Counted from the stretch's first letter, positions 31,666-64,000 are shown. The stretch is DNA of 64,000 nt from Antechinus flavipes (GCF_016432865.1 NC_067400.1:334552001-334616000), one strand, 5' to 3'. A program made the numbers and translations. The notes: generated from the sequence alone by a model not told the origin.

Positions 31666-31803
31666 NNNNNNNNNNNNNNNNNNNNNNNNNNNNNNNNNNN
31701 NNNNNNNNNNNNNNNNNNNNNNNNNNNNNNNNNNNNNNNNNNNNNNNNNNNNNNNNNNNNNNNNNNNNNNNNNNNNNNNNNNNNNNNNNNNNNNNNNNNN
31801 NNN
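31666..31803. other. Assembly gap (138 N)
   Basis: Run of N. Confidence 1.
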
Positions 31804-58165: not shown

Positions 58166-59825
58166 ATGATTATAAATGTGGGCTTTACAGTACCAAAAGC
58201 ACTCTACTATATCACATTGCTTTCTCTGGACTATAAAGAAAACAGAGCCATAGTTTCTGATAACTGGAAAACAAAGAGCTGGTACTTTGTTGGGAAATAA
58301 GGTGAAGGAAGGCAATGCTTAATTTAAAAAAGTGTTCCTGGTCTTTGTTCTAGGAGGTTATTCAGCATTGTCAGAGAGTATTTCTGCATAGCTCTTTTTC
58401 AGAGTCCAAACTTATCTTTGGGGTTATTAATATTTAACAGTTTCTTAGAAAGCATTCTAGCTATCCTTGAGTTCCAGGCCAGGTATGGAGAGAGGTAAAA
58501 TGTTAATAGTCAATTCTACTGGAAGTGATCATCTACCACCAAGAGGGGAATAGAAATTATATAAAGCTAGAATCTGTGGTCTCTGCTGATTAGTCTGTCT
58601 CTTACTTACTGGTTAAAAAAACAAAAACAAAACCTGCTGATTTGTCTATCTCCTACTTATACTTACTGATAAAAACATAATCCTTTACTAAAACCTACCC
58701 AAGGGAAATGTTTAAGGCTTTTTATTTTTCTTCTTATTGCATTTGATTCTGTGTTTCTCTACATTTAAATCCTTTTAAGGTATCACTCAAACTATTTTCT
58801 CTATTTCTCTATCATTTTTATTGCTTAATCACTGATAATAATAGTTGACATTTATTTAGCACTTTATAGACTGCAAAAAATTTTCATACATTATCTCATT
58901 GGATTCTTGATAACAACAGACCCATTAGCTATATGGAATGATATTTTTACTTACTATACACAAAATAATGTGCCTTGCTCAAGGTCACAGAGAGATCTGG
59001 CAGAGATAGGATTGTAACTCAAGTGTGTCTCTCTAAGTCCAGTGACTCCATTCATCACAATGCCTATGAAGTAATCCTAGGGTTATTTCCAAACTGATAT
59101 CTCCAAACAGCTGTTTGCCAAACAATCCAGATGTTGCCTCATCCCTTGCTTTTACTCCCTTCTCCAACTTTCTATTGTAGCGGGGGAAACCGTAAAATGT
59201 AATCTGACACTGAGATTCCAGTGTAGAAAGGAGAAGGTGTAAGGAGGGCCCAGATTCAAATCACAAAATGGAACCCAAGAGTCTTCAAGGAAAAACATAG
59301 ACCAGACAAGTGAATCTCTAGTGCTTAGAGTTACCACTCCAAGTTCTAGCATTTGATTGGATTTAATTCAACAAATATATATCAAAAGTCTATTATGTCC
59401 AAGGCACCATCCTCTTGTTGAGAGTCTAGAGAAGGAAAAGGCCAAGTTTCTGTCCTTAAATACTTAATCATTTTCTTACATTTTTTTTTTACAACTTTTT
59501 TTTTTTTTTTACAAATTTTGCAAATAGGAAAGAGTTTGAGCTTGGTGGAATGGGAAGAAGGCAAGTTAAGAATTATTGGATTATAGACCTAGAACTGGAA
59601 GGAAGGAGAGAGGCCATTTCCTTGAGAAAAAAATGAGATACAGAGATCTTGAACGTTTGACACTGAATTTGAACTTAGTTCTTTTTGACTCCAATATTAC
59701 TGTCCTTTCCACTACATCATGTTGCCTCTCAAATCAAGAAAACTAGGTTGAGGTCTCTGGTTGACTAGTTAGCAAATCCTAGTTTATCTATGAAATATAT
59801 AATATCTAGACTAACTATGTCACAG

Positions 59826-60070
59826 GCAGCTATGTGGCACAATGGATAAAGGTGCTGGGCCTGGAGTTAGAAAAATCTGAGTTCAAATCCCAGTCTCTCA
59901 TATTTATTAGCTGTGTGACCCTGGGCAAGTCACTTATCACTGTTTGCCTAGGTTTCTTCATCTGTAAAATGAGCAGGAGAAGCTCATTTACCATTATCAT
60001 TATCTTTGACAAGAATACCCCAAACAGTCACTAAGTCAATCAGACATGATTGAAATGATTAAACAACCAC
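59826..60070 (+). mobile_element. MAR1-type CORE-SINE
   Basis: ggcagctatgtggcacaatggataaag head, CORE, RTE-type tail. Confidence 0.8.
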
Positions 60071-60717
60071 AAATTACCTCACAAGGTAAAGTACTATAGA
60101 AAAGTGAGCAGCTATCTTTGTGGAATACAGAAGAGAAGGGGGAAAGGAATAATATTTTCTTCTAATTGCTTGTTACATGATTATATTTTATTTTCCCACC
60201 AACTATAGGGGCTTCTTATTTTAATTCCTCCATAGTTCTCAGGCAGATTAGAGACTCAGTAGACTGACTCTACAATGCAAAGACTGTTATTCCCCAGAAA
60301 GGTTTTTAAAAATATTTTTTTACTTTTGGACACATGAATTTAATGAGGATGAAGAAATTTCATTAAGAAAAAGAGTTGTTCAGAAGGAACTTTAATTTGT
60401 TTAAGTTCTCTGCATTTCTATTCTCTCAGATTGATTAGCTGATAACCCTTTGAGAATTTTCAAGCAGAAGAAAACCAGGGGGGGCTTTCTGATCAGGTTT
60501 GGCTTGAATTAGATGAAATCTTTTTCAACTCTGAAAGTATAATTCTGGGATGAGTAATATATATTTGCATGCCTAGTATTTTAAATTTTACAAAATTATC
60601 CTTTGTCCTAGGTCAGTCTTATCTTATGACTTGTGAGAACTGAAAGGCATTTCTGCTTCTCCCATTTGAGCCAGTTTAAGTAGAAGACCAGATGCTGAGT
60701 ACTTTACTTCCTCATGG

Positions 60718-61791
60718 ATGTACGGATCTTATCTCAGAATGGCTGAAGAGACCATGCTGAGTCACCTGGGGGGAAAGGCCACCCCACTCCAGGTGGAAAT
60801 TGTTAACCTAGCACCCGCTTTTTATCAGCTTCCGGGGAACAGCTCCTTGGAACTCGAGAAGGCCTTTTGGACGCTCTTACCCTCGCTCCGTTGGTTCCTC
60901 CTTCCTTTGACTCTGCTCACCACGGTCACACTGACCTTGAGCCCCCTTCTCTTGGTCACTATCCTGCGGAAGAAGAAATTCCGGAGTGAGCCCCGTTACT
61001 TGCTCTTTGCTAACATCATATTCTCAGATCTGACCTATATTCTGTTCCATGTGCTGGTTTCAACAAGTAACCTCACCGGTTGGAGCCTCGGGCGCGTTTT
61101 CTGCGGCATCCTCACTGACGTGATATTTATCGCCTATGCAAGCACCATCTTGTCATTCACCGTCATGGTGGCAGACACCTACCTTGCGGTCATGCTCCCG
61201 CTTCGCTATCTCTCCCTCATGTCCACGGCCACCGCCAGGAAAGTGGTGGCGGTGATCTGGGTGGTAGCCTGCTTCTTCCCCACCTTCCTGGTTTGGTTCA
61301 GCAAACGGCGGGATTCTCGATTGACAAATGACCACTCGCTGTGTATCCTGCAGCTGACCCTGAATTCCCACGCGGACACCAATCACCTGATCACGGTTGC
61401 TCACGTGTTCATCTTCTGCGCCCTCTTTGTCTGTGCGGCTCTGATCTCCTACTGCTACGTAAAGATCTACCACGTGGCCAGGACGTCGGGCCTTTGCATC
61501 AATCGTTATTCGAGGGCCAAAGGAACGTTGCTGATTCATACGATGTTAATTGTACTGTATATCAGTCCCGTGGTGCTTTTCGCCGTGGATCTTATGCTGT
61601 CTAAGAACCGTCGCATTGGAAACAACGCCCGATTATGGTTGATGGCCATTAACAGTGAAATACTGATGCTACTTCCTAGAGCCCTGCTGCCTTACTTGTA
61701 CGGACTGAGATATCGGCAGCTTCTCCAGTCTCTCAAAGGCTTAGTCTCTAGGCGAAGAACCAGTGATATTCAAACAATTTCCCTTGGTTAG
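60718..61791 (+). CDS. GPR148: Orphan class A GPCR GPR148 (intronless; start could be Met at 60718, 60739 or 60754)
   Basis: Seven hydrophobic segments; SPLLLVTILR, EPRYLLFANIIFSDL, CGILTD, STILSFT, TYLAV-PLRYLS, YSRAKGTLLIH, NSEILMLLPRA and LRYRQLL match human GPR148 as recalled; intact 357-aa ORF. Confidence 0.92.
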   Translation: MYGSYLRMAEETMLSHLGGKATPLQVEIVNLAPAFYQLPGNSSLELEKAFWTLLPSLRWFLLPLTLLTTVTLTLSPLLLVTILRKKKFRSEPRYLLFANIIFSDLTYILFHVLVSTSNLTGWSLGRVFCGILTDVIFIAYASTILSFTVMVADTYLAVMLPLRYLSLMSTATARKVVAVIWVVACFFPTFLVWFSKRRDSRLTNDHSLCILQLTLNSHADTNHLITVAHVFIFCALFVCAALISYCYVKIYHVARTSGLCINRYSRAKGTLLIHTMLIVLYISPVVLFAVDLMLSKNRRIGNNARLWLMAINSEILMLLPRALLPYLYGLRYRQLLQSLKGLVSRRRTSDIQTISLG

Positions 61792-62033
61792 TGCAGCAAG
61801 GAAGCTCATCAGTCATGTTAAATGGCTTAGAGGATTAATTTCTCTAGACATCTCAATTATTTTTTCTGCTATAGTGGAATGTTTTGTTTTTTTTTCCTAT
61901 AAAAGTCTAGTCAACAAACATTCATGGGGTGCCTACTCTTCGTCAGACACTGAGGTCTGTGCTGCTAACTGCATCCTCAGTCTCTGGAGACCAAATAGGA
62001 AATAAAACTTTCCCCAAAGAGCCCTTGATTATT

Positions 62034-62055
62034 AATAAATAAAACAAAATAAAAG
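62034..62055 (+). terminator. Cluster of AATAAA signals downstream of GPR148 (also 62001 and 62150)
   Basis: AATAAA at 62034, 62038 and 62048. Confidence 0.5.
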
Positions 62056-62853
62056 AAGGAAGTGCCAAGAACTACTTTCAACCTTTTCTTACTTTAATTC
62101 CTGGACCTTGTAGGTTTCTGTTTTAATTTGTTCACTTTTCTGATTGGTGAATAAAATGTCTGAGTTGGGGAGGAGTCAGGGAGTTGAAATGTAATTTTGA
62201 CTTGATGGCGGGACCAAAGGTCTATAAATAGTTCAGCTACAACTTTGTTTAGCTCTTATCTCCCTGTCCTTAACTTTATTACAAATGACCATAAATGACC
62301 ATGGGATTTTCTGTATAGAGTGTTACTGTTAAATGTCTAAGCTCCAGAAAAAGCATTTGTCAGACAGTTTTATTTATTACCTGATTATAAAGTATAATTA
62401 CTCTGGGTCATCTACCAGCCTGTGGAAATAGCTTTGTTATTAAAAGTCTTATTTTCTATATGGCATTGGCTTTGTTAATGTTTTAATCATTTCATGTCTA
62501 AATTCAAGAGTGAGTTGATCATATAGCTAATCTCTCTCCTGCCTGTCCTTTTGCTGTATAAGAAGGCAGAAACACGATATCACAGCTAGAAAAACCTATC
62601 AAGCACTGAAACAAGTGGAATTAAAGGGAATTTTGTGTCTACCCTTTAGTGAACTGAAATGCTTATTTTTATAATTTCCCATGTCTCTGCTGTCTTCATT
62701 GAGACTGTAAGGTCCCAAGAACCAAAGATTAAATCCTTTTGCTTTAGCTTCTGTAGTATGACTCAATCCTATTTCTTTCTTTTCTCTCCCATGGTCCAGG
62801 CATCCCACTTGCTGCCTCTAAATATGTCCTAACCTAACCTAACTTAACCTAGT

Positions 62854-62975
62854 GGGTGCTAGGTTAACAATTTCCACCCAGAATGGGATAGCCTCCCCCT
62901 TTCCCCTCCTTCCCCACGTGACTCAACATGTTTTCTTCAGCATGTTTCTGGGATAAGATTTGTACATCCAATGAG
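62854..62975 (-). repeat. Inverted copy of the GPR148 5' region (60711-60816)
   Basis: 62854-62878 is the exact reverse complement of 60792-60816 (25 bp); homology continues outward at roughly 85% by eye. Confidence 0.93.
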
Positions 62976-63004
62976 AATTTAAGGACTTTGCTCAGTGATG
63001 TTCC

Positions 63005-63223
63005 CTTAGAATACTCCTTCATATTTGTTCCATCTATCCAAATTCTACCTACCCATGAGTGTCAGCTCATATTGTACCTCCATCATGAATTCTTCCTAGA
63101 CTACCTCTATTTATATTGAACTGTTATAATATTTCTAGTCCACATTATTTGCCTAATCTTAAATTTTTTCATATTATTAAAATTATTTTATATCTCATCA
63201 ATCAGATTGTGAATACCTTCAGG
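63005..63223 (+). mobile_element. L2 3' fragment; its tail appears to resume about 63415-63555
   Basis: cttagaatactcc…agattgtgaataccttcagg, later tagcacagtacc and agtaaacatttgagttgaaatgaat. Confidence 0.55.
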
Positions 63224-63339
63224 AAATCTTATCCCAGAAACATGCCCTTTCCTTTTTTGTAACCACTTTTTTATCCTCCTTCCCATCTTTACTCCTTCTT
63301 CCCTCTCCTTCCCCAGTCTGCCAAAACATACATCTTATA

Positions 63340-63500
63340 AATAAATATATATACACACATATATGTATATATAGTATAAGTATATATACATATGTATATG
63401 TAAGTATAAGTATATACATAGCACAGTACCAGTATCATTATATGTATATATACACACACATATATACATGCATACATACATACATACATATACACATACA
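63340..63500. repeat. AT/AC-rich low-complexity microsatellite
   Basis: (TA)n, (TACA)n and (CA)n runs. Confidence 0.9.
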
Positions 63501-63599
63501 ATGCAGGATTGAGCACATAGTTTGTTTCAGTAAACATTTGAGTTGAAATGAATTTCTTTATCATCTGTACACAAATCCTGGAAACACAGTGAAAGACTT

Positions 63600-64000
63600 T
63601 TTTAAAAAAAACTTTTTATTGATATTCTTTTCTTCTTGTTTACATTATTGTCATCCTTCCCCCAAACCCCTTCTTGTTACAAAATAAATGTAATCAAGCA
63701 ACACTAATCCAATAATATATCGATCATATCTGAAGACATGAAGGCTTTATTCCACACTGCTGTGTAAATTCATTTAAGTCTTCACAAGTTTCTCTGAATT
63801 CTTCGTACTTATTTTTAAAAGCAAAATAAAGTCCACTAAATACAGATATCTTACAATTAGATATTCTTCAAATATTCTTCAAATCAAACAAACTCACTTT
63901 GTTTCTAGTTCTTTGCCATTAAGAAAAGGTGTTCCTATAAATATTTTTGTCTATACTACCATCTCCCTTTTATGTTTAATTATTCATTGGTTTCAGTGAT
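63600..64000 (-). mobile_element. Old L1 3' fragment
   Basis: tttaaaaaaaactttttattgat tail and L1-like 3'UTR. Confidence 0.55.

What the first reader, a model, noticed from the sequence alone, without database searches (positions are those of the whole stretch)
60711..62975. GPR148 7TM body is enclosed by inverted repeats made from its own start-codon region
Seen: 60711-60816 (all three candidate ATGs and the first 33 codons) recurs inverted at 62854-62975. The inner 25 bp are identical (60792-60816 / 62854-62878); the rest is about 85% by eye with 16 extra nt. The 2037-bp spacer holds the whole transmembrane region and poly(A) signals. In the right arm the two in-frame ATGs hit TGA before the core and the third is out of frame, so flipping the spacer would give a receptor with no in-frame leader. 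Inferred possibilities: (a) relic of a template-switch inverted duplication, the perfect core perhaps kept by gene conversion; (b) substrate for a polymorphic inversion switching the gene off; (c) 5'-3' RNA duplex masking the start codons in long transcripts; (d) duplicated cis-element driving antisense transcription. Caveat: 25 bp of perfect identity is short for mammalian homologous recombination, so (a) is the default.
Basis: partly seen in the sequence, partly recalled or inferred. Interest (0 to 1): 0.75.

Follow-up and report, generated by a model that had tools for sequence, protein, structure and literature searches.

The report
Old inverted copy of GPR148 start
A 122-base piece holding the start of a marsupial receptor gene (GPR148) was copied backwards 2 kb downstream millions of years ago and has decayed since; it looks like an ordinary scar of DNA copying, not a switch.

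Summary
Window 60698-60819 (+) recurs reverse-complemented at 62851-62987: 104 matches, 16 mismatches, 19 gap columns, E about 1e-19 within the window. They bracket the whole single-exon GPR148 ORF of a dasyurid marsupial.

The left arm is ancestral gene sequence; its peptide is conserved in all marsupial orthologues. So the right arm is the copy. It keeps older states that the gene has since lost (a Pro codon, an Asn codon) and carries frameshifts and a 13-nt purine expansion. It has evolved freely, without homogenisation.

The 25-nt perfect run is expected by chance (P 0.16-0.35), so gene conversion is not needed. The arm is not a dispersed repeat. It has no other copy in 64 kb, no pile-up of contigs from four dasyurid genome or RNA runs, and no target-site duplication.

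A 22-nt perfect secondary inverted copy of the right arm lies at 63224-63245. Nothing supports an inversion switch, antisense promoter or selected RNA duplex, although a duplex is physically possible in read-through RNA.

This scan has noted many similar local inverted duplications in the same genome. Verdict: ordinary neutral relic, low interest.

The parts
60698..60819 (+). Left arm, the source copy: end of the 5' leader, candidate ATGs at 60714 and 60718, the conserved start ATG at 60739, and the first 27 codons after it
   Evidence: the peptide is conserved in marsupial orthologues
62851..62987 (-). Right arm, the derived reverse-complement copy of the left arm. It is decayed: 16 substitutions, a 1-nt deletion inside the ATGGCT start context, a 13-nt purine-rich expansion and two 1-nt indels
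60792..60816 (+). Perfect 25-nt core, left copy, encoding part of the conserved VEIVNLAP motif
62854..62878 (-). Perfect 25-nt core, right copy
60739..61791 (+). GPR148 coding sequence from the ATG conserved in all mammals. The mechanical ORF starts at 60718. Rhodopsin-family 7TM receptor
62828..62851 (+). (CCTAA)n microsatellite of 4.8 units abutting the inner junction of the right arm
62844..62867 (.). Small hairpin across the inner junction: a 9-nt stem (62844-62852 pairing with 62859-67) and a 6-nt loop. Homology to the left arm ends in a 2-nt overlap
   Evidence: read; flanks
63224..63245 (+). Secondary 22/22 perfect inverted copy of right-arm bases 62940-62961. It carries right-arm-specific states, so it was copied from the right arm and is younger
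   Evidence: (I6)
62001..62155 (+). Cluster of four AATAAA poly(A) signals (62001, 62034, 62048, 62150), about 700-850 nt upstream of the right arm

Best explanation
The structure is a neutral relic of one local inverted duplication. In an ancestor within the dasyurid lineage, about 125-135 nt spanning the end of the GPR148 5' leader and the first 27 codons was copied in reverse complement and placed about 2 kb away, downstream of the gene's poly(A) signals. The most likely cause is a replication or repair template switch onto the opposite strand and back (inferred). The original stayed under selection as part of the gene. The copy drifted: substitutions, frameshifts and a purine-tract expansion. 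A later and much smaller event of the same kind copied 22 nt of the right arm back-to-front 262 nt further on. That the arms bracket the coding body follows from where the copy landed; it is not a device.
For: The repeat is real and significant.

Polarity. The left arm encodes the N-terminus conserved in seven marsupial orthologues, with a start Met invariant across mammals. It is therefore original gene sequence and not an inserted element.

Decay of the copy. Of the differences that orthologue residues can polarise, most are derived in the right arm: T to N, L to V, T to I, Q to W, A to T. The right arm also has frame-breaking indels.

Age.
- The right arm keeps CCC (Pro), as Sminthopsis, wombat, tammar and opossum have Pro there. 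The window and Sarcophilus share Leu.
- It keeps the AAC (Asn) codon that the window species has lost.
- The arms differ by JC 0.147, against about 6.4% between the window species and organism F over 60315-61493.

No homogenisation. The 25-nt perfect run has P 0.16-0.35.

Not a transposon or dispersed repeat. There is no other copy in 64 kb. Only the single orthologous contig, or none, lay on the arms in four dasyurid runs at 80% likeness, while low-complexity spots nearby attracted unrelated contigs from every run. There is no target-site duplication and no Rfam match.

Only the arm was copied. blastn at word size 7 and tblastn find no other gene-to-downstream homology.

The scan's earlier notes list many comparable local inverted duplications in this genome. 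These are leads only.
Against: So presence or absence of the right arm in other species, and therefore its age, is inferred from character states and rates only.

One site (TTC, Phe, in the right arm against Leu in all three dasyurid proteins) and the 14-nt dasyurid-type spacing point to slightly different ages, so at least one is homoplasy.

The mechanism, a template switch, is inferred from the pattern. At 125-137 nt and 2 kb, the event is larger and more distant than the short-range events for which the model was formalised (PMC5453318).

Neutrality is not proven. RNA-library contigs of a related species lie on both sides of the right arm, so co-transcription of both arms is not excluded.
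Confidence: 0.8

Rival explanations
1. The arms act as a 5'-3' RNA duplex. In transcripts that read through the poly(A) signals to beyond 62987, the two arms pair into an imperfect stem of about 120 bp. The stem buries the start codon and lowers translation, or marks the RNA for ADAR editing or nuclear retention.
For: Predicted cofold energy of the two arms is -157.6 kcal/mol, against -72.3 +/- 3.8 for shuffled right arms. In the MFE fold of 60637-63000, 105 left-arm bases pair with the right arm, including the ATG at 60739. Contigs from an RNA library of a related dasyurid cover 60637-62562 and 63088-63227, so they run past all four AATAAA signals and lie on the far side of the right arm.
Against: Pairing is an automatic result of any inverted repeat. 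The right arm itself is not covered by the RNA-library contigs. Contigs give neither strand nor continuity, and DNA carry-over in that library is not excluded. No RNA-only A>G change was seen in the left arm (a cross-species comparison, so weak). The right arm has decayed by indels and substitutions with no compensating changes in the left arm. Similar repeats elsewhere in this genome were judged by-products.
Confidence: 0.07
2. The right arm is the last remnant of a larger tail-to-tail inverted duplication of the whole GPR148 gene. The rest of the second copy was later deleted.
For: The orientation fits a tail-to-tail gene pair, and the right arm holds exactly the 5' end that would lie farthest from the junction.
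Against: blastn at word size 7 and tblastn find no trace of any other part of the gene in 61801-64000. The right arm lies only about 1.06 kb from the stop codon, so nearly all of the second copy would have had to vanish while 137 nt survived at 87% identity. Homology ends sharply at both junctions.
Confidence: 0.08
3. The two arms are chance neighbouring copies of an interspersed repeat, or the arms serve as substrate for a polymorphic inversion that switches the gene off.
For: A third, short piece of the same sequence exists at 63224-63245, which could hint at a repeat family. The geometry would allow an inversion that disconnects the 7TM body from an in-frame start.
Against: Repeat family: the left arm is conserved coding sequence in all marsupials. 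There is no further copy in 64 kb, no pile-up of contigs on the arms in four runs at 80% likeness, and no target-site duplication or terminal repeats. The third piece carries right-arm-specific states, so it is a local secondary copy.

Inversion: the arms are 122-137 nt at 87% identity with a 25-nt longest perfect run. From general knowledge, that is far below the lengths that support homologous inversion in mammals. No strand-changing joints were seen, but only contigs of other species were laid.
Confidence: 0.04

Closest known systems
Template-switch mutations that create inverted repeats (four-point model; Loytynoja & Goldman 2017, PMC5453318; Walker et al. 2021, PMC7954356)
   Same: A nearby stretch of the same chromosome is copied in reverse complement. 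This creates a new inverted repeat with no target-site duplication, with sharp borders and minimal (2-nt) overlap at a junction. The 22-nt secondary copy at 63224-63245, 262 nt from its source, fits the short-range class well.
   Different: The main event is 125-137 nt long and lands 2 kb away, so it is longer and more distant than the tens-of-bp local events for which the model was developed. It cannot be seen as a species difference here, because no orthologous DNA was available.
Replication-based complex rearrangements (FoSTeS/MMBIR), cited from general knowledge
   Same: A polymerase switches to another template using microhomology and can insert inverted segments.
   Different: Those are usually described at kilobase to megabase scale and often with several joined segments. 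Here a single small segment was copied.
Inverted low-copy repeats that mediate recurrent inversions by non-allelic homologous recombination (for example the repeats flanking FLNA-EMD, or the F8 intron-22 repeats), from general knowledge
   Same: Two arms in opposite orientation bracket a gene segment.
   Different: Known substrates are hundreds of bp to many kb at very high identity. These arms are about 130 nt at 87% with indels, and no second orientation has been seen.
Inverted-repeat dsRNA in transcripts (inverted Alu pairs in 3' UTRs or introns as ADAR substrates), from general knowledge
   Same: If both arms are co-transcribed, they would form a long imperfect intramolecular duplex.
   Different: These arms are unique gene-derived sequence and not transposons. 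One arm holds the start codon. Co-transcription and editing are not shown.
Other local inverted duplications noted by this scan in the same genome (s1-183202, s1-189057, s1-204770, s1-192124)
   Same: Arms of 107-320 nt made of unique sequence, 0.25-2.2 kb apart, judged to be by-products of copying errors.
   Different: Here the source is a gene's own start-codon region, and the copy lies beyond the 3' end, so the entire coding body is bracketed.

Membership tests
Local templated inverted duplication (template-switch class) | The copy is the reverse complement of a nearby sequence on the same chromosome, well beyond chance | tested here: met
   E 6.5e-19 within the window; 104/120 ungapped matches
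Local templated inverted duplication (template-switch class) | One copy is ancestral and the other derived | tested here: met
   The left arm encodes the N-terminus conserved in marsupial GPR148. The right arm is frameshifted and carries mostly derived states
Local templated inverted duplication (template-switch class) | No transposon hallmarks: no target-site duplication, poly(A) tail, terminal repeats or dispersed copies | tested here: met
   No shared word of 5 nt or more in the 30-nt flanks; no other copy in 64 kb; no contig pile-up on the arms in four runs
Local templated inverted duplication (template-switch class) | The event is visible as presence or absence between related species | not testable with these tools
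Short-range template-switch mutation in the strict sense (PMC5453318) | The copied fragment is tens of bp and the template lies close by in the same fork | tested here: not met
   The main event is 125-137 nt at 2.03 kb. Only the 22-nt secondary copy at 262 nt fits (I6)
NAHR inversion substrate | Long arms of near-identical sequence | tested here: not met
   122-137 nt, 86.7% identity, longest perfect run 25 nt
NAHR inversion substrate | Both orientations of the spacer found in a population | tested here: inconclusive
   No joints, but only contigs of other species were laid and none spans the stretch
Interspersed repeat / transposable element | Many dispersed copies in the genome | tested here: not met
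   No Dfam or RepeatMasker was available, so low-copy or very old families are not excluded
GPR148 (rhodopsin-family GPCR), the gene that is bracketed | 7tm_1 domain and orthology to annotated GPR148 | tested here: met
   PF00001, E 1e-21; 82-89% identity to marsupial GPR148, and in one 90% cluster with Sarcophilus GPR148
Intramolecular dsRNA element (IR-Alu-like) | Both arms present in one transcript, with A-to-I editing | tested here: inconclusive
   RNA-library contigs lie on both sides of the right arm but not on it. Strand and continuity are unknown. No RNA-only A>G was seen in the left arm

The most novel reading that the evidence does not exclude
In dasyurids a fraction of GPR148 transcripts reads through the clustered poly(A) signals to beyond 62987. 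In those RNAs the decayed copy of the gene's own start region pairs with the real start region. The imperfect duplex of about 120 bp hides the initiation codon or recruits ADAR or nuclear retention. The result would be a self-made, lineage-specific brake on a single-exon GPCR.
Probability: 0.05. Interest if true: 0.5.

Novelty: new member of a known kind. Interest (0 to 1): 0.2.

Why it matters
As it stands, little. It is one more dated example of a local inverted duplication, and it shows that such events can take a gene's start-codon region as template and leave a gene bracketed by inverted arms without harming it. It is a useful negative lesson: bracketing geometry and a perfect 25-nt core look designed, yet both fall out of chance plus selection on the original copy. 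The scan has noted many such events in this one dasyurid genome. A genome-wide census of their sizes and spacings might say something about template switching in marsupial replication, but that is a question about the genome and not about this locus.

Tried and rejected
- Read laying on three DNA runs and one RNA run of related dasyurids: contigs only. Two DNA runs (X8, X14) gave only short low-complexity matches, although X8 holds a third of the words; a filter presumably removed the rest. 62563-63087 stayed uncovered in all runs, so neither presence of the right arm in relatives nor inversion joints could be assessed.
- Exact look-up of four small ORFs over and beside the right arm, in the hope of finding them called in related assemblies: none is in the collection. 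A homology search with the 52-aa right-arm ORF was therefore not spent.
- Gene conversion to explain the perfect core: rejected as unnecessary.
- A degenerate whole-gene inverted copy: no other homology.
- A known RNA family on the arms: none. The only sub-threshold Rfam hits are microRNA-like matches to TA/CA-rich low-complexity DNA at 63341-63504.
- An argument that the right arm shares a derived TAC codon with dasyurine left arms: dropped, because comparison with wombat, tammar and opossum residues shows the state is ancestral.
- Whether the duplication is older or younger than the Sminthopsis split stays open; one site points each way.
- The search of earlier findings by place (near) and by sequence gave nothing.

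Full report
**Observation**

Reading 60500-63200 and running repeat finders confirms an inverted repeat.
- 60698-60819 on the + strand matches the reverse complement of 62851-62987: blastn 74.6% over 138 columns with gaps, E 6.5e-19 against the 64-kb window.
- A gapped alignment has 104 matches, 16 mismatches (11 transitions, 5 transversions) and 19 gap columns. That is 86.7% identity without gaps and a Jukes-Cantor distance of 0.147.
- The perfect core is 60792-60816 / 62854-62878 (25 nt).
- The right arm is 15 nt longer. Most of this is a 13-nt expansion of a purine-rich GGGGAAAGG-like tract.
- The spacer is 2031 nt.
- Its account of the right-arm ATGs is also correct. Those at 62967 and 62943 are in frame with the core but stop at TGA. 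The one at 62929 is out of frame.

**The gene**

The ORF 60718-61791 (357 aa) is a rhodopsin-family receptor (PF00001, E 1e-21). It is the orthologue of annotated GPR148.
- It is 89% identical to Sminthopsis crassicaudata, 82-85% to wombat, Dromiciops, opossum, bilby and tammar, and about 50-55% to eutherians.
- It shares a 90% cluster with two Sarcophilus harrisii proteins. The window therefore comes from a dasyurid marsupial.
- In the protein alignment the Met encoded at 60739 is invariant across all mammals, and one Sarcophilus model (XP_003763797.4) starts there.
- The residues after that Met (AEETMLSHLGGKATPLQVEIVNLAPA) are conserved throughout marsupials.
- The leader upstream of 60739 is in frame with the conserved Met in non-dasyurid models. 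In dasyurids it is one base short, so the ATG at 60718 is probably not the real start (inference).

**Which arm is the original**

The left arm is conserved leader plus coding sequence in every marsupial examined. It is therefore original gene sequence, not an inserted element, and the right arm is the copy.

Orthologue residues polarise the differences.
- Most are derived in the right arm: Thr to Asn, Leu to Val, Thr to Ile, Gln to Trp, Ala to Thr. The right arm also has a 1-nt loss inside the ATGGCT start context and other indels.
- At three places the right arm keeps the older state.
  - It has CCC (Pro), where Sminthopsis, wombat, tammar and opossum have Pro, but the window and Sarcophilus share Leu (60734).
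  - It keeps the AAC (Asn) codon before the conserved Met. Sarcophilus and the non-dasyurids have it, and the window species has lost it.
  - It has TTC (Phe), where all non-dasyurids have Phe and all three dasyurid proteins have Leu (60787).
- The right arm also has the dasyurid-type 14-nt spacing between the GAT/AAT codon and the conserved ATG, not the 15 nt implied by the non-dasyurid proteins.

**Age**

These states place the duplication before the common ancestor of the window species and Sarcophilus, and probably after dasyuromorphs split from the other orders. Its order relative to the Sminthopsis split is unresolved, because one site points each way.

A rate argument agrees.
- A contig of a related dasyurid (run X10, organism F) differs from the window by about 6.4% over 60315-61493.
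- At the left-arm sites where F and H differ from the window (60698, 60723, 60754, 60764, 60789), the right arm sides with the window. At 60701 all three differ.
- The 0.147 distance between the arms is therefore roughly two to three times older than that split.

All of this is inference from proteins and variant tables.

**No concerted evolution**

The arms have diverged freely. A perfect run of 25 or more occurs in 35% of simulations at the observed identity, and in 16% at the identity outside the core. The core also encodes VEIVNLAP, the most conserved part of the N-terminus, so only the right copy was free to change there. Gene conversion is not required.

**Not a dispersed repeat**

- blastn at word size 7 finds no further copy of either arm in the 64-kb window.
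- Contigs of three dasyurid genome runs and one RNA-library run were laid at 80% likeness. The left arm received only the single orthologous contig, and the right arm received none.
- In the same call, low-complexity spots at 61863-61898, 62023-62057, 62459-62495 and 63157-63191 attracted unrelated contigs from every run.
- The right arm has no target-site duplication, and no Rfam family matches the arms.
- The caveat is that no Dfam or RepeatMasker was available, and the read laying filter can drop records.

**How much was copied**

Sensitive blastn and tblastn of the gene against 61801-64000 find nothing besides the arm. This was a small segmental copy and not the remnant of a whole-gene inverted duplication.

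- At the inner junction, homology ends in a 2-nt overlap.
- The right arm abuts a (CCTAA)4.8 microsatellite, whose last unit plus the arm forms a 9-bp-stem hairpin (62844-62867).
- At the outer junction, homology fades within about 10 nt beyond 60698 / 62987.

**A second, later event**

63224-63245 is a 22/22 perfect inverted copy of 62940-62961. It carries right-arm-specific states: AAA where the left arm has GGA, CCC, AAC, and the ATGC form without the G. It was therefore copied from the right arm after that arm had diverged. Size and distance (22 nt, 262 nt) fit the short-range template-switch class described in PMC5453318.

**Functional readings**

- (b) Inversion switch. The arms are about 130 nt at 87% with a 25-nt longest perfect run. 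From general knowledge, that is far below what supports homologous inversion in mammals. No joints were seen, but the data (contigs of other species) could not have shown them.
- (c) RNA duplex. The arms would pair strongly: -157.6 kcal/mol against -72.3 +/- 3.8 for shuffles. In the MFE fold of 60637-63000, 105 left-arm bases pair with the right arm, including the start codon. That is automatic for any inverted repeat.
  - The right arm lies 700-850 nt beyond four AATAAA signals.
  - Contigs from an RNA library of organism H cover 60637-62562 and 63088-63227. They cross the poly(A) signals and lie on the far side of the right arm.
  - However, the arm itself is uncovered, contigs show neither strand nor continuity, and DNA carry-over is not excluded.
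  - No RNA-only A>G change appears in the left arm.
- (d) Antisense promoter. The RNA-library contig begins at 60637, upstream of the left arm, so the arm probably does not contain the promoter. Nothing supports this reading.

**Context in the scan**

Earlier notes on the same genome list many local inverted duplications of unique sequence. Examples:

| Arm length | Distance apart |
|---|---|
| 130 nt | 2.2 kb |
| 191 nt | 256 nt |
| 107 nt, bracketing a REG exon | not recorded |
| 320 nt | 1.4 kb |

The follow-ups judged them copying by-products. These notes are unchecked leads. They agree with the reading reached here independently from the sequence.

**Housekeeping**

The N run at 31666-31803 was left untouched. 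No spliced model was involved.

**Verdict**

This is an old, decayed, local inverted duplication of the GPR148 start region, with a younger 22-nt echo. It is a new member of a known kind, of low interest unless read-through transcripts are shown to use the duplex.

Noticed in passing
window 63224-63245 and 62940-62961: A 22/22 perfect inverted pair lies 262 nt apart. The downstream piece carries right-arm-specific states, so it is a younger secondary copy of the right arm and fits a short-range template switch. An RNA-library contig of a related species stops aligning at 63227, which may mean the piece is absent there.
   Followed up: partly
window 62828-62867: A (CCTAA)4.8 microsatellite sits directly against the inner junction of the right arm. 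Its last unit plus the arm forms a hairpin with a 9-bp stem and 6-nt loop. The microsatellite unit resembles the TTAACCTAG word in the left-arm core. It is unclear whether it guided the event or grew afterwards.
   Followed up: partly
window 60692-60741: In non-dasyurid marsupial models the leader is an in-frame N-terminal extension (LPCGCMDLSPRNM type). In dasyurids it is one base short and out of frame, and the window species has also lost the AAC codon just before the conserved ATG. The real start is therefore probably 60739 and not the mechanical ORF start at 60718.
   Followed up: partly
window 60637-62562 and 63088-63227: Contigs from an RNA library of a related dasyurid (run X17) begin at 60637, with nothing on 60300-60636. 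They run past all four AATAAA signals to at least 62562, and a further contig lies at 63088-63227. This could be a long 3' UTR, read-through or DNA carry-over.
   Followed up: no
window 63336-63504: TA/CA-rich low-complexity tract (periods 2, 4, 10 and 35). It gives sub-threshold Rfam matches to mir-297/mir-466-type precursors (best 46 bits against a gathering score of 90), which is a composition artefact.
   Followed up: yes
window 59667-59693 and 59862-59888: A 27-nt inverted pair, 81% complementary, 168 nt apart, upstream of the gene. It may be chance or part of an old repeat element.
   Followed up: no
window 31666-31803: A run of 138 N (assembly gap or masked).
   Followed up: no
same genome, other windows (scan notes): 152 of 1269 notes on this genome fit the search 'invert duplication'. 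Several describe unique-sequence arms of 100-450 nt lying 0.25-4 kb apart. A census against other mammals could show whether this dasyurid genome is unusually rich in such events.
   Followed up: no
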